A stretch of DNA of 64,000 nt, from contig NW_003314298.1 in assembly GCF_000143415.4 (NCBI RefSeq), forward strand, positions 789,014 to 853,013, read 5' to 3'. This document shows, piece by piece, positions 1 through 42,790 of this stretch. The notes beneath the pieces are model-generated. The model saw only the letters and a program-made list of their open reading frames with translations, made no database searches and was not told the DNA's origin. The stretch comes from Selaginella moellendorffii (taxonomy: Eukaryota > Plantae > Lycopodiophyta). The stretch's first letter is position 1; the number at the start of each line of letters is the position of its first letter. The translations under genes and the position numbers were made by a program.

Positions 1-1658
1 ATCTCCTTATCACGGAGCATGGACTCGACGACACCACCACCATGAGCAACGCTCTTGTCAACGTTTATGGACGTTGTGAGAGTCCGGACGACGCAAGGAC
101 AGTGTTCGATCAACTCGAGCTTCCGAATCTCATCTCGTGGAACTCGATGATTGGAATCTACGTGCAGTGCGAGAGACACGACGACGCTTTGCAGCTCTTT
201 CGGACCATGCAGCAGCAAGGGATCCAACCAGACAGAGTAAATTTCATGACCATCTTGGGAGCCTGTACGATTGGCTCTCACGGAAGAACTCGCAAGTTAG
301 TGCACCAATGCGTCGAAGAGAGTGGACTGGGAGGCTCGCCCCTGGTGCAAACATCCCTGGTGAACATGTATGCCAAAGCTGGGGAGCTCGATGTAGCAGA
401 GGTGATCCTGCAAGAGATGGACGAGCAGCAGATAACCGCATGGAACGTCCTCATCAATGGGTACACACTACACGGGCGAAGCAGGGAAGCTCTGGAAACT
501 TACCAAAGGCTCCAGCTCGAAGCCATCCCAGTGGACAAGGTTACCTTCATCAGCGTCCTCAACGCATGCACAAGCTCAACGTCTCTGGCCGAAGGCAAGA
601 TGATCCATTCCAACGCTGTGGAGTGCGGCCTCGACTCCGACGTGATCGTGAAGAACGCACTGACCAACATGTACTCAAAGTGCGGCAGCATGGAGAACGC
701 TCGCAGGATCTTCGACAGTATGCCCATCCGCAGCGCGGTGTCCTGGAACGGCATGCTCCAAGCCTACGCTCAACACGGAGAGTCCGAGGAGGTGCTCAAG
801 CTTATCAGAAAAATGGAACAGGAGGGCGTGAAGCTCAACGGAATCACTTTCGTCAGTGTTCTCTCGTCGTGCAGCCACGCCGGTTTGATCGCAGAAGGCT
901 GCCAATACTTCCACTCTCTGGGCCACGACAGGGGGATCGAAGTAAAGACCGAGCACTACGGCTGCCTCGTAGATCTTCTGGGAAGAGCAGGGAAGCTCCA
1001 GGAGGCCGAGAAGTATATCAGCAAAATGCCATCGGAACCAGAGATCGTTACCTGGGCCAGCCTTCTCGGAGCGTGCAGAGTTCACAAAGATCTCGACCGG
1101 GGAAAGCTCGCCGCGAGGAAGCTCCTCGAGCTGGATCCAGGCAACTCCTCGGCCAGCGTGGTTCTCTCCAACATCTACTCGGAGCGCGGAGACTGGAAGA
1201 ACGCTGCGAAGCTGAGAAGAGCCATGGCCAGCAGGCGAGTGAAGAAGGTCCCGGGCATCAGCTCGATCCAGGTGAAGAACAAAGTTCACGAGTTTCGAGT
1301 CCGGGACACGAGCCATCCTCGAGCAGCGGAGATTTACGACAAAGTGGAGGAGCTGTGCTTTGCGATGAGGGAGGCAGGCTACGTCCCAGACACAAAGATG
1401 GTGCTGCACGACGTGGACGAGGAGCAAAAGGAGAGCTTGCTGGCTTACCACAGCGAGAAGCTGGCAATCGCGTTTGGGTTGATAAGCACTCCGGAGAAGA
1501 GCTCGCTACACATCTTCAAGAACTTGAGAGTGTGCGAGGACTGCCACACGGCGACCAAGTTTATCTCCAAGATCACCGGGCGAGAGATCGTCGTCCGCGA
1601 CAACCACAGGTTCCACCACTTCAGGGATGGCTCCTGTTCGTGCAAAGATTACTGGTAA
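1..1658 (+). CDS. PLS-class PPR protein with E1/E2 and DYW deaminase domain (organellar C-to-U editing factor); 5' end lies outside the window
   Basis: PPR motifs ([16 protein letters not shown]), PG box [21 protein letters not shown]...CEDCH, C-terminus CSCKDYW; frame is open from base 3. Confidence 0.96.
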
Positions 1659-8516: not shown

Positions 8517-9416
8517 TCAAATGTCTTTGAGATTGTCTGCCACCCGGTTGAGCGCCACGGCCAGATTGGCGAGCTGCGCCGCCAGCTCCCTGCGATCCCT
8601 CGACTCGATCTGGAGCCTCTCCCTCTCAAACTGGAGCGCCTCCCTGTGCCGCGCCTCGCGCTTCTCCTCCATGCTCGCCACCGCCGCCATGTACGTGCTC
8701 GTCAGCTTCCCAATCGCCGCCACCACGTCGCTCGCCGATTGCTGCCTCTTCTTCTTCCCGCTCGACCCCGGCGCCAGCTCGTGGTGGTGATCGTGATCGC
8801 CCTTGCCCGCGCGCGTCGATTGCGCGCTGGTGCTGAGATGGTCCAGCGCCTGCGCCGGCGGCGGCGGCGACACGATGGCCAGCCGCCCCGAGAGGAAAGA
8901 GTCGAGGCGATCGAAGAGGTCCTTGTCGAAGTAGCAGGGCAGCGATGGATCCTCCCTGCGCCGCTCCTCGATCGACATGGCGAAGTAGTTTGGCCTGCCG
9001 CTCTTCTTGAGCACGCCCTTGATCGTCTTGTAGTCGGAGAGGAGATTGTCCCACTTGCCCTTGCACTGGGCGACGTCGCGATCGTCGATCCCGTTGCGCT
9101 TCATGTGATCCACCACGCGCTTCCACTTCTCGCCCGAGCTGATCACCATCTTGTCCCGCGACAGGCAGCTCGCGCCGCTCGTGTCGATCGTCGCCTCCGA
9201 TTCCATCTTCTTGCCCTCGATCAGGAGCAGCACCTCGCTGTGCGTCCAGTTGCGATTCCTCTTCCTCTTCCCGGACAGCTGGTCGCCGGCATTCCTCGCG
9301 GCGCCACCGCCGACGCCGCCATAGCCCTTGTGAGCGGCAGCGTCCCCGACGATCACCTCCGAGCCCCCGAATCCGGCCTGCGATGCCTCTACCAGCTCCA
9401 CCAGCGGCGATGCCAT
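8517..9416 (-). CDS. Trihelix (Myb/SANT-like) DNA-binding protein with C-terminal coiled coil, intronless
   Basis: NWTHSEVLLLIE...KWKRVVDHM...QCKGKWDNLLSDYK; ERR...LP..FD signature; coiled-coil tail. Confidence 0.88.
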   Translation of the reverse strand: MASPLVELVEASQAGFGGSEVIVGDAAAHKGYGGVGGGAARNAGDQLSGKRKRNRNWTHSEVLLLIEGKKMESEATIDTSGASCLSRDKMVISSGEKWKRVVDHMKRNGIDDRDVAQCKGKWDNLLSDYKTIKGVLKKSGRPNYFAMSIEERRREDPSLPCYFDKDLFDRLDSFLSGRLAIVSPPPPAQALDHLSTSAQSTRAGKGDHDHHHELAPGSSGKKKRQQSASDVVAAIGKLTSTYMAAVASMEEKREARHREALQFERERLQIESRDRRELAAQLANLAVALNRVADNLKDI

Positions 9417-9626
9417 CGTAATCTCGCCCTACAGCTCCATGGAGTCTCCCCAGCTCTCTTCTCACCTGGCTCGATCCATCGCTCTTGCCCGCTCGCGGGA
9501 GCCCTAAACTCCGGCCGACGTGGCGCTCTGGACGGCCGGGATTGATGCTCTCGAAGCAAGGGCTCGGATTGAATAGGGTTTGAGGGCTTGCTCTTCGTTG
9601 TCTGTGCTCGGTGGAGGAAGGCGCGC

Positions 9627-10517
9627 ATGGCATGGGACCTAGCGCTGTGGATTCTCTCGTTTCTCGCGGTCGCAGCGGCGCTGGGGATCATCGTCTACCA
9701 GGTGAGCTCTCTTCCTCCTCGGAATCTCTTCGTCAGTGATGAGAAGGCAAAAATTCATTCTTGGCGAGTCCTTTGGACAAATGAGCTGGAGTAATCGCTA
9801 ATCTTCTCTCTGAGACGCTTCTTGCCACTGATGATCCACTGTAGCGTGTCATATGAGTTCTTCTTTAGGACAGTGACTATAGCACAGTCTTTAAATCTGA
9901 GGCTTCAAAAGGGAAATTTTTTTTCTTCTCTTCTGATGATGGGTTGTTTTTTTTGTCCTTCTCTCGCAGCTGCTATGTCTCTCCGATCTCGAATTCGATT
10001 TTATAAATCCCTTTGATTCTTCATCGCGTATCAACCGGTTTGTTCTTCCTGAATTTGCTATCCAGGGAGTGCTGAGCGCGATCTACCTTATTTTCGGCTA
10101 CTGGCTCATGTTCTTGCTAAACGCCCCGCTCTTATATTATAACATAAGACTGTAAGTTGCCATGTTTTTCATGTTTCCCTGCATTGACATGCTCTGATGT
10201 TAACGTGAATTTCTTTTTTTTTTTCACCTCAGATACATGAGCAAGAGGCACCTTGTAGATGTCACGGAGATCTTCAATCAGCTTGAACCGGAGAAGAAGA
10301 TACGCTTCTACAAGCTCGGCTTTTACCTTTCTTTGCTGTGCATCGTCATATACAGGTAAGCATAGCTCCGTGTTTATTTCTTAAAAGTTGGATTACTTTC
10401 TTGTACAGGATGCTATTGAGTGTGATTTAAGGATTTTTGTTGCTGCTCTGTAGGCTGGTGGTTTCCTCGATGGAGGTCATTCTCGAGTCGGGCATTGCAT
10501 CCATGGCGGAGATTTAA
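9627..10517 (+). CDS. Cornichon family ER cargo receptor (4 exons; alternative last exon ending at 10430)
   Basis: LLCLSDLEFDFINPFD, PEFAIQ, HLVDVTEIFNQL, KLGFYL across GT-AG-bounded exons. Confidence 0.93.
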
Positions 10518-10939
10518 TTGTGAGAATTCAGTTGTTCCACTCTTTAGTGCTGAACAAATTTTCGTCCACGCAGGATTTTAGTTTCTCAAACGTGTAGAGT
10601 GAGGTACAAATAGATGGTAATTTTTGATGTGATCTAATGACTTCTATGTGCAGGAAAGAAAAGTATTTTCTTTGTGAATATTGTAGTCTATCTTCGGCTA
10701 TAATATATGTACGCATTGCGTCAAAAATGAAGTGTCGCTTCTCATTGGGTACGCGGCGAATAAATACCGCTTTCTCAAAAATTCGTGGGACCAAATGTTT
10801 TCAGAAAACAGCTCCGCTCCATCTATGCCCGTGCCTTGTCGACAAATTTCTATTTGTCGGGTAATCACATTTTTAATTTTTTTTTTTCCCTCTCTTTTGC
10901 GGCTGGTTGTGGAATCCGTCTCATGGTATATATTTGCAG

Positions 10940-12391
10940 ATGCGGCGGGACGAGAGCTCACTTCGAATGGGGTTTCTTTCCTTGCTGCGATCAAGGAAGT
11001 CAGGTTTCGTTCTGGAAGGTGATGAATCAAGCTCGGCACGCAGTAGTGGAAGTGTCGCTCCTTCAACAGAGTTAGAGGGTGCTGCTTATGTCTGCTCCGC
11101 TTGCAAGACTCGCAGTTTTAGGAGCTCGGGAAGGCCACTGAAGGTTTTCTTTTATGAGGAGCTCAAGGCAGCTACCAACGACTTTGGGTTTTGCAACTAC
11201 ATGGCAGACGCAGAGGGTGGTCATGTATTTAGAGGAGTTTTAGAAGGAGGCGAGGTGGTTGCCGTGAGAGTTATATCGGACGCATCAGTCTTTCAATCTC
11301 GCAAGCAGCTCTTGGGCCGCATTCGTTCGTCTAATATTGTGAGACTGGTAGGCTACTGCGACGAAGGCGACGACAGGAAATTTCTTGTTTATGACTTCAT
11401 CTGCAACGGCTCTTTGGAGTGGCATCTAACAGGTAGCGAATTTTTTCCTTTTCATCTTTACATCGTCGTTGTTCTCTAATCGTGACCTTGTGCAGTTCTC
11501 ACTCGGAATGCCATGGGTTGGTCTATAAGGAAGTCAATTGCCGTGGGAATAGCCAAAGGTTTGCTTTACTTACACAGCTACTCAATCGCACATAGGAACT
11601 TGCGATCTAGGAACGTTCTCTTGACTCATGATTATACACCAGTTGTAAGTAAGCTATGTTTGTAGTTTCAGTGCCTAAAACATTTGCACAGATTACAGGG
11701 ATGGGCTATGCAAAGCATAAAACTCAACCAGCTTTTCCAAGTCCTCCTTGTGTCACTGGGTAAGTTTTGTATTTATCTCAGACGCCATTGCTCATTTTTC
11801 ACGTTGATAGCTACTCTGCTCCAGAACATTTCCGGGGGCATGCAGTGGACGAGAAGAACGATATCTTTTCCTATGGTGTCATACTGCTGGAACTCATCAC
11901 TTCTCGAAAGGCCATGGAGGATTCAAGCCAACGCCTTCTGACAGAATGGGTAAAATGCTGCCTCGTGGTGTTCGTCTATTGACATAGAGTTGTTTTATAG
12001 GCGTCCCCGCTGCTCCGAGACTTTGACCGCCAAAAGCTCGTCGATCCCGAGCTTGGCTGCGACGATAACAACACCTACGAGCTTGTCACTATGATGAGCA
12101 TTGCGTCGCTCTGCTTGAGCGAAGATCCACTGGAAAGGCCAAGCGCAGACAAGGTAAACGTGCGAGAACTTGAGTGTCTCATCGCCTTTTTAAATATCGT
12201 TCCAGATCTTGAGCCTGCTAGAAGAGGATTGTGACAGGGAGGTTTTCAGCTCCGACGATGACTTGTCCACTCTGTCGCAAGCTTCGTCGTCGCTAACACA
12301 TCGAGCGGAGAAAAAGGTGACTTGGAATGCTTGCTCTCCAGTAAGAAGAGCTCCTTCTCGTCGCCTCTCATACAATGTCATGCTCTCTTAA
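10940..12391 (+). CDS. RLK/Pelle-family cytoplasmic pseudokinase (6 exons)
   Basis: CSACK motif, FFYEELKAATNDF, IVRLVGYC, NGSLEWHL, YSAPE, DIFSYGVILLELIT, ERPS; catalytic motifs read VAVR, HRN, GMG. Start codon uncertain because the ATG follows an AG acceptor. Confidence 0.85.
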
Positions 12392-12549
12392 AAAAAACTA
12401 TGGTTCTTTTACTAAAGAAATTCAATCCTTTTCATCGTCTAAGGGAACGAAAAATTATACTAGAAAATAGTATATCAATGCCATCTCGAAGTTTCGCCCC
12501 GTAAAATTTCAAACTGATACTACTTGGATTTCCTACGATCTCACCATAT

Positions 12550-13213
12550 TCAAAACCGTTGATTGTTCCGATTGATATTAGAAAAGTATTTGCGCCAAGA
12601 AAAACATCACCGTGGTGACAAGAGGAGAGAAATCTGGCATAAAAAGACAAAACAAAAGAAAAAAAAAAACCAATACATTTTAATTACTTTTTCCATTCTA
12701 AAAAGCTTACCAGATCGACCAGCGCTGTTCTGCTCGAGCAAAGCTGCAAACACACAAAAAGTTAGGCCTGGAAAAAGAAAGAACCAAAAAGGAGAGGATA
12801 AACAAGGAAGAGAAAAAGCGAAGGAACACACTATCACCTACAAGCAAGGAATGGCAGGCAGAGAAAAGAGAGGAGAGCTTACTAGGACAGGCACTGGTGT
12901 TGGAGTCGAGCTTGCAATGCGTGGGAAGCATGACGGCGTTGGTGATATTGATCCCGGGAGTGGAAGTTACACCGCCAGTGGAGGAGAGGAGCTCGCACAG
13001 GCAAACGGGGCTGTGCTGATAGATGTAGTGGAGCCCCCGGCAGCACCTCGAGCCTGGAAGATCTCTCTTTCCCTCGATGTAAGTGATGCACGGCTGTATC
13101 CTGGCCAAGCGAGCTGTGCACTGCTTGTCCTCCCCAAGGACCAAGTGTACCACTAGGGGCAGTAGCAACACCAGCAGACTCACTCGCGCCGAGGAAGACG
13201 AAGGCGAAGCCAT
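12550..13213 (-). CDS. Non-specific lipid transfer protein (LTPG-like), 3 exons
   Basis: Signal peptide plus 8-Cys motif C-C-CC-CxC-C-C; last exon and stop inferred from splice sites. Confidence 0.85.
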
Positions 13214-13807
13214 TCTCTTCCTTCCCGAGCTCTGTCCTTGCGATCGAAAATGGAAATGAGACTCTACCTCGGCTTGGCTTGGCTTGATCTCGAGCTTGAG
13301 CTCTGCTCCACCGCTTTTTGAGACTCGCTCCCCCCCTTCCTCCTCGAAGGAAGAACTGTGAGGCACCTGAAAATCTGCTGCCGCTGCTCCTGAAACTGTG
13401 TTCTTGTTGCAGAGTAAAACTTGGTGTTTAATCGCTTGCCACTGCGGGAATTGAATGGAAACGTGTCAGGTAGCATTTAAGAAGACAACTACCACGCTGC
13501 ACTAACTGCACCACCTTTGGCTGGCGTATATGCGATTCCCATATGTTTCTCGAAGAATTCAACTCTATCAATTTTGGAGCTCGTCCTGTCTTTTTGTCCG
13601 CGTCAACAAATTCCGAATGATCATTAAATAATCAACGCTTTGAGCTGATCAACCTGGAAAGAAACCAAGTACAGGAGGAAGTTTCCATTTATGTAACAGA
13701 GAAAAGAAACACCAGTCAGTGCACGCACCTCACTACAAAATAGCAATCGCTTTTGTCTGGTCAAGCCTGAATTATAAAGCACGTCCATCGATGAGAAACA
13801 AGAAATT

Positions 13808-15589
13808 CTATAACGGAGGAGCAACAAAACGAACCTCATTGTCCTCCTCCTCATCGCCTGCCGAATGGATCATGTTGGACAAAACTACGTAACCCGAGCA
13901 GTCGTTTGGATCCAGCTCCAGCAACCGTTCAGCTGCACGCTTGCCACACTCGACGTCTCCGTGAACGCTGCAAGCTCCCAGCAGAGCAACCCACAATCCT
14001 CGATCACTGTCCATGCTCCTGAGAAAGTTTTCTGCCTCCCTCAACCATCCAGCACGTCCTAGCAGCCCGACCACACAGCCACAGTGCTCCAACCCGGGAA
14101 CCAGCTCGTCGTCCACGAGCATCGCGTAAAAGTTCTCACACCCATCGGCCAAGAGCCCCGCATGGCTGCAAGCCCAGAGAACACTGACGTAGGTGACTTC
14201 GTCGGGATCCACACCAGCTTGTTTCATCTTCCTGAATAGATCCAGGGCCATACTGCTGTCCCCGTGTTGCGCGTAGGCATTGATTAGCGCGGTCCACGAG
14301 ATGGAGTCCTGGTGGTCGAGGCTGTCAAACACTCGTTGCGCGTCTTGAAAACTTCCACACTTCCCATACATGCTCACGATGGCGTTTCCAAACGAGCTCT
14401 GCAACGCAGCACCAGTCTCGGCGCTGCAAGCATGAACCATCCTCCCCTCGGCCAGCGAGCTCGTGTTCCCGCAAACTTCCAGCATGCAGAGAAGTGTCAC
14501 GAAGTCAGCCCTCACGCCTTCCAGTTGCATCCTCAGAAACAGCTTCAGCGCCTCAACGTCTTGTCCATGCTGAGAGTAACCAGTGATTATCACAGTCCAG
14601 CTGACCACATTCCTGTGTTGCATCTTGCTGAAAACCTCCCTGGCCTTGTCCAACCTTCCACACTTTGCGTACATGTTGACTAGCGCATTCCCAACCTGAA
14701 GCTCGTTTTCAAACCCGGCTTCAACAAGGCACGAGTGAATCGCGTCCCCGGCCCTGAGATCATCACACGCGGTGAGGGTGGCAACGTAAGTCACGCTATC
14801 ACTTCGGACTCCCTCCTGTTGCATGGAGTGAAAGATCTCCATGGCTTCCCTGTTATGCCCGTGTTGAGAATAGGCGGTAACCATCGCAGTCCAGGACACT
14901 GTACTCCGGGGACTCATCGCGTCAAACATTTGCCGGGCACTCCACGGACAGTGGCACTTGCTGTACATGGTCACTAAAGCTGTTGCCACGAAAGTGTCCG
15001 ACTCGATGCCAAACTCCCGTATGCATGAATGGATCTTCTTCCCTTCCGAAAGTTCGTGAGAGCCACTTAAAACTCCCAAAACTACGATGAAAGTGATCCT
15101 GTCAACTTTGGCACCCTCTTGCTGCATCCTCCAAAAGAGCCGGAGACAGTACCTCGAGTGCATACGCCCGGCTTGGGCATAAGCTGAGATGAGAGCGTTC
15201 CAAGACACCGAGTTGTGCTGCGGCATAGCTGCAAAAACCCGACTTGCTTCTTCCAAACTTCCACACCGCCCATACATTCGCACGATGTGGTTCCCCAAGA
15301 TGAGGTTCTCTTGGAGACCTGCCTGAACTGCGAGACCATGAACTTTCCTCCCTTCGACCAGAGCGTTTGCGTTCCCACATGCCTGGAGAGCTCGAGCATA
15401 TGGACCCGGATGAGATGGTAGATTATCCGGGTCCAAAGCATCTACCAGTCTCGTCAAACTGCTGCTTTCACTGGCAATTTGCTCCAACCGATCAAACAAT
15501 CCCTTGAGCTGCTGCTGCTGTCCGGTCTTCTGGATTCTTGCCAAAGGAGTGGGAGTGACCACCACCAGACCACGAAGAACATCGCCCAT
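13808..15589 (-). CDS. PLS-E class PPR protein (no DYW), intronless
   Basis: PLS repeats (SWTAMVTAYSQHG, NALVNMYAKCG), E domain LWVALLGACSVHGD...YVVLSN; first ATG at 15589. Confidence 0.93.
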   Translation of the reverse strand: MGDVLRGLVVVTPTPLARIQKTGQQQQLKGLFDRLEQIASESSSLTRLVDALDPDNLPSHPGPYARALQACGNANALVEGRKVHGLAVQAGLQENLILGNHIVRMYGRCGSLEEASRVFAAMPQHNSVSWNALISAYAQAGRMHSRYCLRLFWRMQQEGAKVDRITFIVVLGVLSGSHELSEGKKIHSCIREFGIESDTFVATALVTMYSKCHCPWSARQMFDAMSPRSTVSWTAMVTAYSQHGHNREAMEIFHSMQQEGVRSDSVTYVATLTACDDLRAGDAIHSCLVEAGFENELQVGNALVNMYAKCGRLDKAREVFSKMQHRNVVSWTVIITGYSQHGQDVEALKLFLRMQLEGVRADFVTLLCMLEVCGNTSSLAEGRMVHACSAETGAALQSSFGNAIVSMYGKCGSFQDAQRVFDSLDHQDSISWTALINAYAQHGDSSMALDLFRKMKQAGVDPDEVTYVSVLWACSHAGLLADGCENFYAMLVDDELVPGLEHCGCVVGLLGRAGWLREAENFLRSMDSDRGLWVALLGACSVHGDVECGKRAAERLLELDPNDCSGYVVLSNMIHSAGDEEEDNEVRFVAPPL

Positions 15590-16845
15590 CACAAGTCTTT
15601 TCGGAAGAACATCTCCGCGAGTTGGTCTCTCAGTTCCTGGCCCTGCTGCTCCTCTAAACTAGCACACTCGCCGTTGCCTGCCTGTAGATGGTGGTGTTGT
15701 TGGTGGTATCTTACAAGGCTGTCCTCGTCCAGCCTCAGTGTCTGGAGAATGCTCTCGACCGGGATCTCGTTCTTGTCCAGCAAAACGTTGTGTAGGATGC
15801 AGCAGGCTGCGATGACTTTGGGAACAAACTTGACGTTGTGCTTCACGCACTTCGCTAGTATCTCGAACGTCTCCTTGAGAATCCCGAAGCTTTGTTCGAT
15901 GTGGATCACCGCCCGAACATGCCTCCTGTTAAAACTCTCAGCCATCACAGGCGTTTCAGCCTCCTGGTAGCGGACCAGCAGCCACGGAAGAAGCGGGTAC
16001 TTGTCACCACCCACAAGATAGTGCACCGAAGAGTTCTCAGACTGCGCCGCCGAGAGTAAGTTCGCTCCAGTTTTCAGTAGACCAGGACTGTGGGGATGCT
16101 GAGCATTGCATTGTATATCCAGAAACCTGTACGAGGTGTCGCAAACAGCCTGGAGCGCGATCAAACAGCTTGGTACGTCTCCCGAAGCCATAACTTGAAC
16201 ATTCGTCGTACCAATCGCACCAACGCAATTCGGAAGCTCGCACTTGTCGACAAACCCAGCAGCCGTCTGCCTGAGCCTCTCGGGAAACCTCACACAGCTT
16301 CCAAAGTGCTGGTTGATCGCCCTGACCACGTCAATGACGCAGCTCTGCGAGCTGCTCACACCGATTCCAAACTTCTCGCCTATGACGTGCAAGTCAGCCC
16401 CGCTGGTCAGCCTGTAGAGCGCGGCACCCAGCCTGCATGGAACCGGAATCGGCGACCTGAAGGTGGTGACTTTCTTGTTGAGCAGCGGCTTCAGCTGGTC
16501 GCAGATCCACAAGAACGTCTCCCGAGACATCTTGAGAGCGTTGAACCAGCTATCCCGGTCGTGCACCTCGAGCAGGAACTTATCAAACCAGGCTGGGTTT
16601 CTCGGCTTCACCCACCACCCAGCATCCGTGGAAAGCGCCAGAGAAGCCGACAGCATTGCACTTTGGAAGAAGAGCGCGTTGAGCTCGTCATCCTCTTCTT
16701 CCTGGCGTTTCTCTTCGTCCTGGTCACGAGCGAGACCGGTTTCCAGTCCAAACGACGCAGGACTTACGTTGATAATCTGCTCCACAGCACTCGCGGCAGA
16801 ACAAGCTGTCGCAACAGCAAGCCTGAGCTTCTTCCTCCGGTCCAT
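15589..16845 (-). CDS. HARBI1/ALP1-like Harbinger-derived DDE nuclease-fold protein, probably domesticated
   Basis: WWVKPR, MSRETFLWIC, ALYRLTSG HTH, PNCVGAIG, QAVCD, YPLLPWL, FNRRH, IEQSFGILK, ACCILHN; no TIRs seen. Confidence 0.88.
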   Translation of the reverse strand: MDRRKKLRLAVATACSAASAVEQIINVSPASFGLETGLARDQDEEKRQEEEDDELNALFFQSAMLSASLALSTDAGWWVKPRNPAWFDKFLLEVHDRDSWFNALKMSRETFLWICDQLKPLLNKKVTTFRSPIPVPCRLGAALYRLTSGADLHVIGEKFGIGVSSSQSCVIDVVRAINQHFGSCVRFPERLRQTAAGFVDKCELPNCVGAIGTTNVQVMASGDVPSCLIALQAVCDTSYRFLDIQCNAQHPHSPGLLKTGANLLSAAQSENSSVHYLVGGDKYPLLPWLLVRYQEAETPVMAESFNRRHVRAVIHIEQSFGILKETFEILAKCVKHNVKFVPKVIAACCILHNVLLDKNEIPVESILQTLRLDEDSLVRYHQQHHHLQAGNGECASLEEQQGQELRDQLAEMFFRKDL

Positions 16846-17540
16846 CTGTTCATATCAAAAACAACGTGTCGTATCACTACCACCAAAGGAGAAAATCGGT
16901 AGGAAAAAATCTCCAAGGTCGCACTGACAACCAGCAGGACAGATCGTCGTCACAAGAGTGAAAAGTCAAAAAACAAAGAGCTCGTGCGATGGCGAATTGA
17001 ATAAGAAGGAGCCAATCATTCATGCGTCAAGACCGAATCAACCAGTAGCAGATTTGCAGACTTGCAGATGTGAGCGCCGATCGATAGAATAAGACCTCAC
17101 GAACAAACAATCGCCATTTCACGAGCCATCGCTCGAGACAAAACAGTTTCACGACCAAGACTCGAGGGAAAATATGCGAGAAGAATCCATGAAAATGCGC
17201 AGCTCAATCCACCCAAAATCTAGAGCGCTCTGACACCGCGTTCTTACCTTCGGATGCACGCCATCGAAGATGCAGCTCTCCTCCTCCCAATCCGCCATAC
17301 CCTAGCACTGCGACTTCTTCTCCATCGCTACAAGCAAGCCAGCAGCCCTTAGGTCAAAATCTTTCACAAGGATTTTTTTTTTTTTTTCCTTCGGTTTAAC
17401 ATCACAATATCTGTACATCAGAGGAAGAGAATCAAAAAACATTCTCTGGTATTTTCTCTAAACTCACTCTCTTCTAGCATCGATTCTCCACCGATCTTTC
17501 ACCGAGAAGAAAATGCGATGGCCGCCGCCGCTCGAGAAGA

Positions 17541-20253: not shown

Positions 20254-21848
<1,595 letters not shown>

Positions 21849-21879
21849 TCTTTGTACCTCGAACCGGCCCTAATTTTTA

Positions 21880-24169
21880 CTAGGGTTCCCAGCGAACAGG
21901 CCCGCCACCTCCAAAGAATGGTCGCATGTAAGAATCATCGAAGCCTCTCCACAGGCTATGCACTGCCGAGGTTGGATTGGCGAGAAGCATGCTGAGGCTG
22001 CTCCGCCGGAGAAAGGTTGACGACCCATCTTCGTTTGCTTCTTCATCTTTCGGGGACGAAGGCTCCAGATGCCGTAAGTGGTGAGGGAGTAGTGTTGCAA
22101 TCAGCGGTTTTGTGACAACTCCCACCACCTTATAGAAAACGAAGTTAGCAAATCTTGTCAGTTTCAGGAAGAAAATTTTACGTACCAAGGTTGTGAAGAG
22201 TACTACTCCAGTTGTGCTATAGATCATGGTTGCATAGTCCGCGTTCATGGTTCCACTTGACGTTGAGAACTGAGAAACAAAGAAAATGGCGATGATCTTT
22301 TCTGATTAGATGCTTGTGTACCTGCTGGTACGCAAGGGCGATGGAGACTGCTCCCCGCATTATCCCGGACCACCAAATAATCACCTGTGAAAAACAAATC
22401 GTGGTGAAAAAACTGGCTCTGGTACTTTTTAAGCAGTAGTTTTCTTTCCCTTTGCTATCTCACTACGCTAGAATTACCTGGTGCCTAAAGCGCAGCTTCA
22501 CGCTTGATGAACCACGGGCATAGTTGGAGATGGCGGACATTGGAAAGACAAATGCCGCCCTCCCGAGAGGAGTTAGCGCCAGCAGCATAGCACAACTCAG
22601 TGATGCGGCTCTGCATTCATTCCAGATTCAAGTTGTATTAGTGATCAAGTTCAGAATGAAAGTACTCCCACTTGCCTGACATCGACAAGTTGCCATATGT
22701 TCACGTTGAAAACATTTGTCCCCACGTACAAGAACATGAAGCTTTCGGAAATGGAAGAAAAGGTAGCGAAAGCATGCCTGCTCCACCGGAGTTTTACGTC
22801 AGTGATAACAAGAGCTTACTTTACCATGGCTCTTACTTGGATGTGATTTTGGAACTGCCAGAAACATTGTGCCAGCCGTAGTGGGACATGAAAATGCCGC
22901 AAAAGAAAACCGAAAGTATCCCGCTCCATTGGAATAGCTGAAAATAAACAAATTATCGTTGAGGAAGAAACGATTATAGGCAAACCTCAGCCAACATATA
23001 AGACAGATACGCCATCAAAGCCATCAGTGCAATCTCTTTATCCGTGGAGTGCCTGCACTGTGTGAACTGTGACGTAAACACACGCGCCAAAACAACTGTA
23101 AGAACACGTACTTCCCGAAGTATAGACTCTTGAGAACATAAGCTGCGATCAGTCCAATCTAAGTTCATGAGAATTAGCCCAAGATTTAACAGAGAACTAA
23201 CGACTTACCACAACTCCAAGCACGGTGCTCACTGAGAAGAGGTAGACAAATTCATAGATCATTCTCAGCGCTGCTTTTCCATCCAATCCAGCCTCTTCAA
23301 ACCTCTGAACAGCTCGGAACAAAACAACAGCGGTTGCATCGTTAACCACCCCTTCCCCAAACACAAGACTGTAAAGTAGAGGAGTTTCGTCTTGGTGCAG
23401 CAACTGGCAGAGAAAGAAATCATGAAATTATAAACAAGCACGACGAGACAAAACCTGTAAAGTTGCCACGGTGTCTGTCGCCGAGAAGATTGTCCCAAGA
23501 GCTGCAAACACCCAACAGCGATTGGAAGACAATGACATTAGTCGATCGATTTAGCCTTGCTCACCCAAGTAATCTCTCATTTGCAGATTTCCAAGTTTTA
23601 GCCGCGGAAACATGTACTTGCATCCTGCAAAAATGCCAGTAGCGTGTTAAAGTTGAACAGCATCGCCATGGAAAAATCAAACCAGCTGTGACGATGGATG
23701 CCGAGATCAAGACACCGGATCCGCCAAAGAGCATGATCGTTCCAAAGTTGTGAAAGAATTGCTTCTTTTTCACTTGAAAGCTATGCCAAGAGAAAAAGAA
23801 AGATACGTGATCAAAGGGAGAGCCAGTTTACCCCGCATTGAAGATTATAGGAGGAAGAAGGTAGATGAAAAGCAATTGCTCGTGAGGATATAGATCACGA
23901 AGCCGACAGCACAACCCTGATAGAAAAAAGATCATGTAGAGAAAAAGTTTCTATCGAGAGATGGTTTCAATAAATCATACCAGGATAATCGCAATGGTCG
24001 CTTGATTCAGCCAGCGATTCTCCTCGTAGTAATGGCCGATGACAATGCACACGCACAGCAACGATACGAAGAGCGAGATCGAGATCACGGCCGCACGCTG
24101 AGATCCTGCCGCCGAAATCTCTGCCGCTTTTGCCACCAGGAATTCATACAGCCAGCCGACATTCTCCAT
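21880..24169 (-). pseudogene. NHX: Vacuolar-type Na+(K+)/H+ exchanger with a frameshifting deletion in exon 2 (null allele, pseudogene or assembly error)
   Basis: EENRWLN, FIYLLPPIIFNAG, FQVKKKQFF, GEGVVNDAT, WWSGIMRGAVS, WRGFDDSYMRPFFGG; exon 2 (23916-23832) is 85 nt, incompatible with phase 0 to phase 2. Confidence 0.8.
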
Positions 24170-40439: not shown

Positions 40440-42790
40440 TTACCATGCATCACTGCAACAACAACAGCCTCCTTCGAAACAGTGAAGCTGTTGACTATCT
40501 TGAACAAAGATCTTCTTTCCTTTTCCAGCAATCTCAGAAATCACTTTTGCTGAGGCATGGCAATCACTGCACATCTGCATGTTATTACTGACAAGAACAT
40601 TCTATTTGTGAGATTCTTGAAGCAATGCATATGCAATTGCAAGCTTCTCATGGACCTCCTCTTTGTTGCAATTGGGGTGCCAAAAGTTCTCTTCTTTCAC
40701 ATACCCATTCTCTTTTGCCAGCTTCATTAACCTCGTGAGCTCACCCCATATTTCTTTTATATTAGGATGACCAATCCCCCACACGAAATGTGTGCATTTT
40801 TCCACCAAGTTGGACACGGTTGATTGCTCCAAGCTTCTTCAAGCCCTCTGTCACCCTCCAAGCCCTTCTCTGTCACCATCTTTCTCAGCCCAGCAATTTC
40901 ACCAGTCCTGCTTTTCCCATATATCTCCACGAGGATAATGTATGGGGTGGCATTGTTTGGGTCCATGGCAAATATCTGCTTTGCAGCATATTTTCCGTGC
41001 CCAGCATTTACATGCTTCCTACAGGAAGAGAGAAATGTCATCCAAATTCTTGCATCCCGCTCATAGGGCATCGTCTCAATAAGTTCTTGGGCCTCTTCCA
41101 TCCGCTTCACCTTCCCAAGCATCCCAACCATGCAATCGTAATGCTCAATCCCTGGCACAATACCAAAGTCGGGTTCCATGGGCGTGAAAAATAGGCTTTT
41201 GCTCTCTTCAACATCCAAAACCTGGCTGCTTGCCACGAGTATAGCAATGAATGTCACCCTGTTGGGTAGAATTCCATCCAAAATCATTTCATTAAAGGTT
41301 TGAATCGCATGTGTTTCATCCCTTATCATTGTGCATGCCCTGATCATGGATGTCCATGTGTACACATCTTTGTTAAGCGTGTTGGCAAACAATGCCTTTG
41401 CATCATCATACCTCCCGCACGCTGCATACACAATGAGCATTATGAGGATTATATTGTGTGTGACAATATCTTTGTGTTTAGATTTGTCGTAAAAAAAGTC
41501 AACTGCTGATTGAAGACGGCCGTTTTGGGCATATCGCATTGACTGACGCCACATCCGGCTCGTCCATCCGGTCAAACATGGCCCTCGCGGAGTCAACGTC
41601 CCCGGTATTGGAATAGACCTCCAGCATCATCGTCCAGTGAACCACTGTTTTGTCATGCGGCATCTCCTCCAACACTTTGAGAGCTTTTGCCAAACTTTCT
41701 TTTTCACCTACACAGTGCCTCGAGTAGACACGTCCAAGAAATAGCATCTTTCGTGGGCATGTGTTAAATACATTTTTCGCATGGACTAATCGACCATTTC
41801 GTACAAGCTCCTTCATCATTGAATTCCAAGTGATCTGGTTCCTGAGCTCTTTTGGCATTGACTCAAACATCTCCTCAGCTTCTTGCAGTCTGCCAGCTTT
41901 TCCGTATGCAGAGATCATCACATTCCATGATGCTGCACTCTTGGTGTCACGGGGAATCCCATCAAACATCTCGCGAGCTCGATTAAGTTGCCCGTTCTGA
42001 GCATACCCTTGGACCATTGTGTTCAATGTAACAACGTTTGCCACCTTCAGCCCATAAAAAATTCTCCTTGCCTCGTCTACTTCCCCGTATGCACCCAAGA
42101 GTATGGTCCATGAGTAATCATCCTTTTCGGGCACTTGATTGAAAAACTCCGTTGTCTCAACGAGTTGATTCTTTTTAGCCATAGCTGCTAACATGATGTT
42201 CCAAGACACCAAACTCTTGGCTTCCATCTTCTCGAACAAGATCCAAGCATCTTCTACCCGGGCGTTTTGAGTGTATACTTTAAGCATAATATTCCCAAGA
42301 GTAGATGTTTGGCCGCTTGATTTCATCAAACACCAAACGACCATCGTCTGAACTCCCAAACATCTCAATCAACAGATTTGCCACAAACTTATCATTCCGA
42401 TAACTGCTTCGACGAACACATCTTCTTCAGCGTCTCTACAGAATGGATGTTCTTCCCATCAATCATAGTATGTGAGTTGGAAAAAGATCTTGATAAGAGC
42501 TCCTTCGCATGACAACCCCAATGGGTGTACATTTCAGTTGACATCCATTCAAGATAAGCGTGAGGAAGATCTGTAAGTCGCTTACCCTTGTATTTTCCAA
42601 AGTCCACTACCATTGATCCAATTCTATCACCATTTGGCTCGTGTATTTGCACATCCTTGTTTCTGGCCAAAGTTTGAATTGCTACCTCCTTCCACTCATT
42701 GTCAAGCTCTTGACTCATCCATTTCAAGTAGTTTTCAGGTACCGATTCAGATTCCTCGTGATTAGTGCCACAATTTAAAAACTCGTTAGA
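40440..42790 (-). pseudogene. PLS-E-DYW PPR pseudogene with N-terminal DUF3820-like motifs
   Basis: FGKYKGKRLTDLPHAYLEWM, then PPR repeats in shifting frames, HEKLAIAYAL*...MCSDCH...CCCSDAW. Confidence 0.8.

What the first reader, a model, noticed from the sequence alone, without database searches (positions are those of the whole stretch)
13808..16845. Stop-start coupled (TGATG) gene pair: HARBI1/ALP1-like ORF and a PPR editing-type ORF, a candidate bicistronic mRNA in a plant
Seen: on the minus strand the 418-aa HARBI1-like ORF ends AAA GAC TTG TGA (15591-15589), and the A of that stop is the A of the first ATG of an intact PLS-E PPR ORF. Both ORFs are intronless, with zero spacer for a 3' UTR, promoter or 5' UTR. 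Candidate UTR splice sites lie only upstream of the HARBI1 ORF. The PPR frame is open only from 15658. Known: TGATG overlaps mark translational coupling or termination-reinitiation in prokaryotes and viruses, and plant bicistronic mRNAs are rare (e.g. CDC26-TTM3). Inference: one transcript may yield both a chromatin-type domesticated transposase and an organellar RNA factor, by reinitiation or by a -1 frameshift or splice fusion.
Basis: partly seen in the sequence, partly recalled or inferred. Interest (0 to 1): 0.85.

Follow-up and report, generated by a model that had tools for sequence, protein, structure and literature searches.

The report
Zero-spacer ALP1-like/PPR gene pair, Selaginella
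In the spikemoss Selaginella moellendorffii the stop codon of a tamed transposase gene shares a base with the start codon of an organelle RNA-binding (PPR) gene; both genes are kept by selection and RNA crosses the joint, but whether one mRNA makes both proteins is unproven.

Summary
Observation confirmed. The window is S. moellendorffii scaffold GL377602.1. On the minus strand the ALP1-like gene ends TTG TGA at 15591-15589. The A at 15589 starts the only usable ATG of a 593-codon PLS-type PPR ORF. RefSeq annotates two genes sharing that base, and the other haplotype has the same joint.

Two details need correcting. The ALP1-like protein is 435 aa, with a 17-codon first exon and a 402-nt intron. 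The PPR has an annotated 68-nt intron at its 3' end, stops inside the E motif and has no DYW domain.

Both genes are old, have no close paralogue and are under purifying selection (dN/dS 0.23 and 0.17).

The 3.5 kb from the ALP1 intron to the PPR stop has no AT-rich island or AATAAA hexamer; such islands flank the block. Contigs of at least 12 runs labelled as probable RNA hold every sampled word across the joint.

Features expected for ribosome coupling are absent: ORF1 is long, has a strong start context and 15 ATGs, and there is no TURBS-like motif, slippery site or structure.

Best reading (about 0.4): one transcribed block, with the PPR made from a shorter RNA starting inside ALP1. True termination-reinitiation is about 0.25.

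The scan also noted this joint on the other haplotype.

The parts
17248..17298 (-). ALP1-like CDS exon 1 (17 codons, MADWEEESCIFDGVHPK). Its ATG has G at -3 and G at +4.
   Evidence: Exon 1 plus the 418-aa ORF equals XP_024539288 (P0001, 435 aa).
16846..17247 (-). ALP1-like intron, 402 nt (donor AAG|GTAAGA, acceptor AACAG|ATG).
   Evidence: The haplotypes differ here by 2.6%, against 0.7% in the ORF.
15589..16845 (-). ALP1-like CDS exon 2 (418 codons plus TGA). It is a domesticated Harbinger/HARBI1-type DDE_Tnp_4 protein with two of three catalytic residues replaced.
   Evidence: Pfam PF13359 4.4e-15. The alignment shows D to G, D to P and E kept. dN/dS is 0.23. No TIRs were found.
15587..15591 (-). 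TGATG stop/start overlap. The A at 15589 is shared.
   Evidence: It is identical in the other haplotype (L002 7698).
13808..15589 (-). PPR ORF (593 codons plus stop). PLS-type repeats with a 303-nt periodicity, an E motif cut at 44 of 63 positions, no DYW. The RefSeq CDS is 15589-13835 plus 13766-13761.
   Evidence: dN/dS is 0.17. The nearest other protein is about 40% identical.
13767..13834 (-). Annotated 68-nt intron at the very 3' end of the PPR CDS (GAG|GTTCGT ... TTCAG|GCT TGA).
   Evidence: Derived from the gene range 7710-9538 in L001 with a 586-aa product, the BLASTP end at residue 585 and the sequence.
13391..13833 (-). AT-rich tract after the PPR stop, with CATAAA (13693), ATTAAA (13432) and TTGTA (13738). 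It is the likely poly(A) region of the block.
17341..17480 (-). AT-rich tract between the NAC gene stop and ALP1 exon 1. It is the likely NAC 3' end and ALP1 promoter.

Best explanation
Two unrelated, independently selected nuclear genes of Selaginella moellendorffii lie head to tail with no spacer. The first is a domesticated Harbinger transposase (ALP1/HARBI1-like, catalytic triad degraded). The second is a DYW-less PLS-E PPR protein.

Shown: both ORFs are intact in both haplotypes and evolve under purifying selection. The ALP1 stop is at its ancestral place. The whole 3.5-kb block has coding-like composition and is bracketed by AT-rich tracts. RNA-run contigs cross the joint.

Inferred: RNA polymerase II starting upstream of ALP1 exon 1 reads through to a poly(A) site after the PPR stop. 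The ALP1 mRNA therefore carries the PPR ORF as its 3' part. The PPR protein, needed only in small amounts, is made mainly from a shorter RNA whose 5' end lies inside the ALP1 gene (a nested, TATA-less start site). It is not made by ribosomes that have just finished ALP1. On this reading the TGATG is the end point of spacer loss in a very compact genome, not a coupling device.
For: - The joint and both ORFs are confirmed. RefSeq models two genes sharing one base in both haplotypes.
- Selection: NG86 dN/dS is 0.23 (4 non-synonymous, 5 synonymous) for ALP1 and 0.17 (6 non-synonymous, 10 synonymous) for the PPR. dS is about equal to the intron and spacer divergence of 0.026.
- The PPR has no close paralogue (next best about 40% identity), so a 593-codon ORF has stayed open for a long time.
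- The ALP1 C-terminal E-L/V-R-x-Q-L-A motif and stop position match Ginkgo and Marchantia relatives.
- One-block composition: from 17340 down to 13834 there is no 40-nt window with at least 65% A+T, no AATAAA or ATTAAA, and only one 1-mismatch variant in the PPR ORF. Such tracts lie on both sides of the block.
- RNA: 12 runs labelled 'RNA?' from 6 studies hold 15 of 15 sampled words of 15490-15690. Nine runs hold 0.82-0.88 of 13700-17400, which is about everything but the introns.
- Against coupling, and so for a separate RNA: ORF1 is 435 codons with R at -3 and G at +4. It has 15 ATGs before the PPR ATG, with no depletion (8 out-of-frame against 7.0 +/- 2.0). There is no UGGGA within 150 nt.
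- Established knowledge: in Arabidopsis, second ORFs of read-through RNAs are rarely translated, and 202 of 271 second genes have their own start sites (PMC9768141).
- The genome is very compact. Divergent pairs have only 115-210 nt between CDSs, so promoters here are short and can lie in neighbouring genes.
Against: - No transcript 5' or 3' end was observed, and no read-level data could be laid.
- The 400 nt upstream of the PPR ATG hold no telo-box, site-II element, TATA or pyrimidine patch. In contrast, 4 of 6 other PPR genes of this genome carry a telo-box or site-II element within 130 nt of their ATG.
- The RNA around the joint is less folded than shuffles (z +1.87). That suits an accessible start codon on a long RNA as well as on a short one.
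- First-stage notes list other stop/start overlaps in this genome with a PPR as the downstream gene (untested). That could point to a systematic mechanism rather than accidental packing.
Confidence: 0.4

Rival explanations
1. True dicistronic mRNA with translational coupling. The only PPR-encoding RNA is the ALP1-PPR read-through transcript. A fraction of ribosomes (or their 40S subunits) ending at UGA re-start at the overlapping AUG (UGAUG). This gives a low, fixed ratio of PPR to ALP1-like protein. Continued translation may also spare the mRNA from decay triggered by a 1.9-kb 3' UTR with an intron.
For: - There is zero spacer with a stop/start overlap, conserved in both haplotypes.
- The PPR ATG has G at -3 and G at +4.
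- There is no internal poly(A)-type or promoter-type sequence. The telo-box and site-II elements seen at other PPR genes are absent here.
- The joint is unusually unstructured.
- RNA contigs cross it.
- The PPR is clearly under selection, so it must be translated from some RNA.
- Other such overlaps were noted in this genome (untested).
Against: - Reinitiation efficiency falls steeply with the length of the first ORF, which here is 435 codons.
- There is no TURBS-like UGGGA motif and no Rfam element.
- In Arabidopsis, second ORFs of bicistronic read-through RNAs are rarely translated (PMC9768141).
- Green-algal polycistrons use leaky scanning with weak ORF1 start contexts and few ATGs (PMC11291117). 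Neither holds here.
- The nearest ALP1-like relatives checked (Marchantia, Riccia, Eucalyptus, one Logan contig) have no PPR beside them.
Confidence: 0.25
2. Shared promoter with alternative splicing. The donor of ALP1 exon 1 (17248|17247) is sometimes joined to an acceptor just upstream of the joint. One candidate is CTACAG|G at 15682|15681, which leaves a 47-codon upstream ORF ending in the TGATG; reinitiation after an ORF that short is plausible. Another is the AG of the TAG at 15660-15659, which would fuse exon 1 in frame to the PPR with a 23-codon linker. The ALP1 ORF would then be an intron of the PPR mRNA.
For: - Frames and sites were read from the sequence. Exon 1 ends in phase 0. 15681 is in the ALP1 frame and 15658 is the first open codon of the PPR frame.
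- It would explain the missing promoter elements and the exact position of the ATG.
Against: - No junction read was seen, because none could be laid.
- RefSeq gives no such isoform in the tables available.
- The 15659 acceptor has a purine-rich, poor tract.
- An intron of about 1.57 kb would be long next to the two annotated here (402 and 68 nt).
- Exon 1 is acidic and unlike a transit peptide.
Confidence: 0.15
3. One fusion protein, made by a -1 ribosomal frameshift or by a short intron near the joint.
For: The PPR frame is -1 relative to ALP1 and is open for 23 codons upstream of its ATG.
Against: - There is no X XXY YYZ heptamer in the ALP1-frame codons 15660-15592.
- There is no stable downstream structure; the RNA is less folded than all 200 shuffles.
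- The good donor CTT|GTAAGA at 15715|15714, joined to TTTAG| at 15654, gives a 61-nt intron. That leads into the third frame and a stop, not into the PPR frame.
- No protein with the ALP1-like domain followed by PPR repeats is among the best 150 hits in 1.84 billion representatives.
Confidence: 0.03
4. The PPR ORF is a silent passenger in the ALP1 3' UTR: a decaying, DYW-less relic that is not translated.
For: - It is cut inside the E motif and lacks DYW.
- It has no promoter of its own in view.
Against: - The 593 codons are open in both haplotypes. There are 10 synonymous against 6 non-synonymous changes (dN/dS 0.17), and the nearest relative is only about 40% identical. An untranslated ORF of that age would carry stops.
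Confidence: 0.05

Closest known systems
Arabidopsis read-through (polycistronic) transcripts, 271 loci (Kurihara et al. 2022, PMC9768141)
   Same: Tandem same-strand plant nuclear genes are covered by one RNA. The first stop plus the second ORF look like a premature stop with a long 3' UTR. Second genes usually keep their own start sites.
   Different: In Arabidopsis there are real spacers and first-gene poly(A) sites that are skipped. Here the spacer is -1 nt and no internal poly(A)-type sequence is visible, so read-through would be the default, not the exception.
CDC26-TTM3 bicistronic mRNA of land plants and green-algal polycistronic loci (PMC7896298, PMC11291117)
   Same: Two unrelated proteins come from adjacent ORFs of one nuclear locus, and the arrangement is conserved.
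   Different: Algal ORF1s are reported as small, with weak start contexts and a bias against internal ATGs, and ORF2 is reached by leaky scanning (PMC7896298, PMC11291117). From my own knowledge, not read here, CDC26 is likewise a short first ORF. Here ORF1 is 435 codons with a strong context, 15 ATGs and no depletion.
Viral termination-reinitiation at overlapping stop/start (calicivirus TURBS, influenza B M1/BM2 UAAUG); from my own knowledge
   Same: An overlapping stop and start pentamer follows a long first ORF.
   Different: Those viruses need an upstream 18S-complementary motif (UGGGA) within about 90 nt. None lies within 150 nt here, and no conserved structure is present.
ALP1 and HDP1, domesticated Harbinger transposases of Arabidopsis (PMC5339849; ALP1 from my own knowledge)
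   Same: DDE_Tnp_4 fold, an incomplete catalytic triad, no terminal inverted repeats, and a single-copy syntenic host gene.
   Different: The sequence is only 25-29% identical to the angiosperm homologues found. Its clade (with Ginkgo, Marchantia and Riccia proteins at 33-40%) was not placed relative to ALP1 or HDP1. No PRC2 or IDM1 link was tested. 'ALP1-like' is NCBI's automatic name.
PLS-class E-subgroup PPR RNA-editing specificity factors
   Same: P-L-S repeat triplets followed by an E motif, in a species with thousands of organellar editing sites (PMC5654404).
   Different: It stops at position 44 of the 63-position E motif and has no DYW deaminase. It cannot edit by itself, and it may act with a trans DYW protein or as a plain RNA binder. 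No target was predicted.

Membership tests
Harbinger/PIF DDE_Tnp_4 transposase family (HARBI1-like) | Significant match to the DDE_Tnp_4 domain | tested here: met
   PF13359 E 4.4e-15, 56 bits against a cut-off of 24.8, residues 231-353. 887 homologues have E up to 1e-10.
Harbinger/PIF DDE_Tnp_4 transposase family (HARBI1-like) | Intact D-D-E catalytic triad (needed for an active transposase) | tested here: not met
   In alignment A1 the first D is G, the second D is P and the E is kept. Ginkgo, Marchantia and Riccia relatives each lack at least one.
Harbinger/PIF DDE_Tnp_4 transposase family (HARBI1-like) | Transposon anatomy: terminal inverted repeats, an adjacent Myb-like ORF, multiple copies | tested here: not met
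   No flanking inverted repeats in 13300-17340. The neighbours are NAC and PPR genes. There is one locus per haplotype. This fits a domesticated gene.
ALP1 clade proper (PRC2-associated) | Orthology to Arabidopsis ALP1 in a tree; association with PRC2 | not tested
   Only NCBI's automatic name is available. No Arabidopsis ALP1 or HDP1 sequence was obtained from a tool.
PLS-class PPR, E subgroup | Tandem P/L/S PPR motifs | tested here: met
   PPR_2 1.8e-57, PPR 1.7e-56. DNA repeats occur at spacings of 303, 603 and 906 nt, the size of P-L-S triplets.
PLS-class PPR, E subgroup | Complete E1+E2 motifs | tested here: not met
   E_motif PF20431 is matched only at profile positions 1-44 of 63, ending at residue 586 of 593.
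DYW-type editing factor | C-terminal DYW deaminase domain | tested here: not met
   No PF14432 hit. tblastn with the DYW-bearing PPR P0120 finds nothing downstream of 13823.
Bicistronic/polycistronic nuclear mRNA | Single RNA molecules containing both complete ORFs | tested here: inconclusive
   Contigs of at least 12 probable-RNA runs hold all sampled 31-mers across 15490-15690 and 0.82-0.95 of 13700-17400.
Bicistronic/polycistronic nuclear mRNA | No separate transcript for the second ORF, and the second ORF translated from the shared RNA | not testable with these tools
   Needs CAGE or 5'RACE, long-read cDNA and Ribo-seq.
Leaky-scanning polycistron (green-algal type) | Weak ORF1 start context and depletion of ATGs before ORF2 | tested here: not met
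   G at -3 and G at +4 at the ALP1 ATG. There are 15 ATGs, of which 8 are out of frame against 7.0 +/- 2.0 in synonymous shuffles.
Termination-reinitiation (TURBS type) | Stop/start overlap plus an upstream 18S-complementary motif | tested here: not met
   The overlap is present, but there is no UGGGA within 150 nt upstream. Only the viral consensus was searched.
Programmed -1 frameshift fusion | Slippery heptamer plus a downstream stimulatory structure in the overlap | tested here: not met
   No X XXY YYZ in 15660-15592. The minimum-energy fold is weaker than all 200 shuffles.

The most novel reading that the evidence does not exclude
The locus is an obligate dicistronic mRNA of a vascular plant. 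Ribosomes finishing a 435-codon first cistron re-start at the overlapping UGAUG to make a PPR protein. It would be one of a set of such units in S. moellendorffii, in which low-abundance PPR genes ride on the transcription, and perhaps the translation, of unrelated upstream genes. First-stage notes list a tRNase Z-PPR ATGA overlap, a pTAC14-PPR overlap and a PPR-PPR TAATG overlap, all untested.
Probability: 0.2. Interest if true: 0.8.

Novelty: new member of a known kind. Interest (0 to 1): 0.45.

Why it matters
If the pair is only tightly packed, it shows how far spacer loss can go in a compact plant genome. The promoter and 5' UTR of one gene, and the 3' UTR of another, would lie wholly inside coding sequence. 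That is a caution for gene models and expression counts at such loci.

If the PPR is really translated from the ALP1 transcript, it would be a land-plant case of reinitiation after a long first ORF. It would be unlike the short-ORF, leaky-scanning cases known so far. It would also give a simple way for the several hundred PPR genes that I recall being reported for this species to be expressed at low level without promoters of their own.

The locus is small, single-copy and present in both haplotypes, so it is directly testable with long-read cDNA, 5'-end mapping and Ribo-seq.

Tried and rejected
- **Read laying.** No depth, ends or splice joints were obtained. The Rfam and repeat scans stopped at 17340, and the motif script used only the 55 nt next to the ALP1 ATG. 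One local composition script did read the window across them.
- **Conservation outside S. moellendorffii.** No other Selaginella ALP1-like or PPR orthologue is in the protein collections; the next hits are 38-40% identical. Neighbourhoods of the Eucalyptus, Marchantia, Riccia and one Logan relative show no PPR. The Ginkgo protein is not on record with DNA.
- **RNA contigs through the protein index.** The exact 593-aa PPR is not in the collection, and the 435-aa protein is only on the NCBI scaffolds.
- **Fusion protein.** None among the best 150 of 4,896 hits.
- **Rfam at E up to 1.** No match.
- **Transposon ends.** None found.
- **Literature.** Searches for Selaginella with polycistronic, bicistronic or overlapping genes found nothing on this locus or on nuclear polycistrons in lycophytes.
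- **Word search of earlier findings.** A search requiring all words returned nothing.
Full report
**What is there**

The window is Selaginella moellendorffii scaffold GL377602.1, read in reverse. The minus strand carries these genes in order: NHX, agmatine deiminase, a NAC gene, the ALP1-like gene, the PPR gene and an LTP gene.

One search shows the text aaa gac ttg TGA TGg gcg. The ALP1-like stop is at 15591-15589, and the PPR ATG at 15589-15587 shares its A. One search lists both ORFs.

Pfam gives DDE_Tnp_4 for the first ORF. For the second it gives strong PPR, PPR_2, PPR_1 and PPR_3 matches plus a partial E motif.

RefSeq annotates two genes whose ranges meet on the same base. The second haplotype scaffold, GL377579.1, does the same. 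The 21-nt text around the joint is identical there.

- The ALP1-like protein XP_024539288 is 435 aa. A 17-codon exon 1 (17298-17248) is joined across a 402-nt GT..AG intron to the 418-codon ORF.
- The PPR model is 586 aa. A 68-nt intron (13834-13767) replaces the last eight ORF codons with a single Ala.
- The PPR frame is closed by TAG at 15661-15659. It has no other ATG until about codon 104, so 15589 is the only start that gives the full repeat array.

**Are both genes real and in use?**

*ALP1-like gene*
- It has one locus per haplotype.
- Its nearest relatives, by the search, are Ginkgo Gb_03106 (38% identity), Marchantia Mp_2g14130 (39%) and Riccia (35%).
- In the alignment the first catalytic D is G and the second is P; the E is kept. 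The relatives each lack at least one of the three.
- No inverted repeats flank it.
- It is therefore a domesticated Harbinger transposase. That is the same kind of gene as ALP1 or HDP1 (PMC5339849), though its clade was not placed.
- Its C-terminal motif (E-L/V-R-x-Q-L-A) and its end a few residues later match Ginkgo and Marchantia. The stop is at its ancestral place and was not extended to meet the PPR.

*PPR gene*
- Its only near-identical hit is its allele (P0011, 99%).
- Every other protein is about 40% identical or less, so it is an old gene with no close paralogue, not a recent retrocopy.
- It ends at position 44 of 63 of the E motif and has no DYW domain or DYW remnant downstream.

*Selection between the haplotypes*
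- The ALP1 ORF has 5 synonymous and 4 non-synonymous changes (dN/dS 0.23).
- The PPR ORF has 10 synonymous and 6 non-synonymous changes (dN/dS 0.17).
- dS (0.018-0.026) is about equal to the intron and spacer divergence of 0.026-0.029.
- The counts are small but agree with the age argument. Both are translated genes.

**How unusual is the spacing?**

I read same-strand CDS-to-CDS spacers from the RefSeq tables of five loci of this genome. They are -1, 31, 209, 232, 242, 449, 509, 547, 584, 758, 913, 924, 1059 and 1455 nt. The median is about 530 nt.

Divergent pairs can be as close as 115-210 nt. The genome is very compact, and this pair is its extreme.

Six other PPR genes, picked by homology and not by spacing, all have a divergent upstream neighbour 115 to 6,300 nt away. 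None abuts a same-strand gene.

**Signals for one or two transcription units**

- On the minus strand, from 17340 down to 13834, no 40-nt window reaches 65% A+T. There is no AATAAA or ATTAAA, and only one 1-mismatch variant inside the PPR ORF.
- AT-rich tracts lie just upstream of ALP1 exon 1 (17480-17341) and just after the PPR stop (13833-13391). The latter holds CATAAA, ATTAAA and TTGTA.
- The 400 nt before the PPR ATG hold no telo-box, site-II element, TATA or pyrimidine patch.
- Three of the six other PPR genes have a telo-box within 90 nt of their ATG. Two have a site-II element within 130 nt, one of which also has a telo-box, so four of six carry one or the other. An exact 8-mer like the telo-box is expected about 0.01 times per 400 nt, so that enrichment is real.
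- These points favour one block, but weakly. Two of the six other PPR genes also lack these motifs.

**RNA evidence**

- Sixteen of the runs listed (fifteen labelled 'RNA?', one '?') hold 0.62-0.95 of the sampled words of 13700-17400. Nine of them hold 0.82-0.88, which is about what is left when the 402-nt and 68-nt introns are absent.
- A second search with only 15490-15690 found 12 runs labelled 'RNA?', from 6 studies, that hold 15 of 15 sampled words.
- RNA therefore runs across the stop/start joint.
- This is required by every model with a zero spacer. It does not show that one molecule carries both ORFs.
No ends, depths or splice joints were seen.

**Could ribosomes couple the two ORFs?**

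- *Leaky scanning* is unlikely. This is the mechanism shown for green-algal polycistrons (PMC7896298, PMC11291117). Here the ALP1 ATG has G at -3 and G at +4. The CDS holds 15 ATGs before the PPR ATG, three of them in strong context. Out-of-frame ATGs are not depleted: 8 against 7.0 +/- 2.0 in synonymous shuffles.
- *Termination-reinitiation* would have to follow 435 codons. No UGGGA motif lies within 150 nt and no Rfam family matches. The 201 nt around the joint fold less well than all 200 shuffles (z +1.87). That suits an open start codon but is no coupling device.
- *A -1 frameshift* lacks a slippery heptamer and a structure.
- *A short-intron fusion* fails. The one good donor nearby (CTT|GTAAGA, 15715|15714) with the acceptor at 15654 leads into the third frame.
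- *A fusion protein* does not appear among the best 150 of the 4,896 hits in 1.84 billion representatives.
- In Arabidopsis, second ORFs of 271 read-through loci are rarely translated, 202 second genes have their own start sites, and the read-through RNAs are decay targets (PMC9768141).

**Reading**

The shown facts are these:
- two selected genes with a 1-nt overlap in both haplotypes;
- coding-like composition throughout the block;
- AT-rich brackets on both sides;
- RNA across the joint.

I infer one main transcription block from upstream of ALP1 exon 1 to a poly(A) site after the PPR stop.

| Route to the PPR protein | Probability |
|---|---|
| Shorter RNA starting inside the ALP1 gene | about 0.4 |
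| Genuine reinitiation at UGAUG | about 0.25 |
| Exon-1-to-joint splice | about 0.15 |
| Silent relic | about 0.05 |
| Fusion protein | about 0.03 |

The splice route would use either CTACAG|G at 15682|15681, giving a 47-codon upstream ORF that ends in the TGATG, or the AG of the TAG at 15660-15659, giving an in-frame fusion. The last roughly 60 ALP1 codons before the conserved terminal motif are a variable, gapped region among relatives. That region could tolerate embedded start-site signals.

One consequence follows from known plant decay rules and was not tested. An ALP1 mRNA that carries 1.9 kb and an intron after its stop should be a decay target, unless it ends earlier or ribosomes continue.

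**Wider context**

First-stage notes on this genome list the same joint on the other haplotype. They also list other stop/start overlaps, several with a PPR as the downstream gene, and other tight pairs. I verified only two of them:
- the other-haplotype joint;
- the 31-nt NHX to agmatine deiminase spacer in this window.

If the rest hold, the phenomenon is systematic and would raise the value of this locus as a test case.

**Verdict**

The anatomy is slightly different from what was described. The bicistronic idea is open but not the most likely route to PPR protein. It is a new member of the known kind 'zero-spacer or read-through tandem genes in plants', and is worth one long-read and 5'-end experiment.

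Noticed in passing
window 21848-21882 (minus strand): The NHX-type antiporter CDS ends TAG, and the agmatine deiminase ATG follows after only 31 nt on the same strand. The spacing is the same in the other haplotype. It is a second near-zero spacer within 6 kb of the finding.
   Followed up: partly
window 15616-15602 and 15586-15572 (minus strand): A 15-nt segment containing GATGTTCTTC occurs twice, 30 nt apart, on either side of the TGATG (13 of 15 identical). Both copies lie in the ALP1 frame (..EMFF.. and, after the stop, ..AMFF..). It may be a trace of a small duplication at the joint, or it may be chance.
   Followed up: no
window 17325-17302 (minus strand): A 7-codon ATG..TAG mini-ORF ends 3 nt before the ALP1 exon-1 ATG. 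It would be an upstream ORF if the transcript starts further upstream.
   Followed up: no
window 8517-9416 (minus strand; L008 19910-20809): A 299-aa Myb_DNA-bind_4 (trihelix/SANT) gene lies about 6 kb downstream, on the same strand as the ALP1-like gene. Harbinger transposases work with a Myb-like partner, so it may be worth checking whether this is a co-domesticated partner or an ordinary trihelix factor.
   Followed up: no
L008 9931-9985, L010 9977, L011 17947-17992, L009 9791-9871: Telo-box (AAACCCTA / TAGGGTTT) or site-II elements lie within 130 nt upstream of the ATG in 4 of 6 sampled S. moellendorffii PPR genes. The same elements are known from angiosperm promoters of organelle and translation genes. 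They are absent upstream of the PPR studied here.
   Followed up: partly
runs X17-X20, X32, X33 (sample S17): Very small libraries of unknown kind hold only 0.20-0.26 of the 3.7-kb stretch but 0.53-1.00 of the 201 nt around the joint. Their coverage seems concentrated there. If they are end-tag libraries, this could mark a transcript end.
   Followed up: no
window 3-1655 (+) and 40443-42311 (-): A 997-aa DYW-type PPR gene runs off the left edge of the window. It has only 115 nt between its CDS and that of a divergent neighbour. A fragmentary PPR-like region, with tblastn pieces at 24-41% identity, lies at about 40.4-42.3 kb.
   Followed up: no
window 8517-13213: CDS-to-CDS spacers of 186-210 nt occur for a divergent pair (Myb|cornichon), a tandem pair (cornichon to kinase) and a convergent pair (kinase|LTP). 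UTRs and promoters in this region must be extremely short or overlapping.
   Followed up: partly
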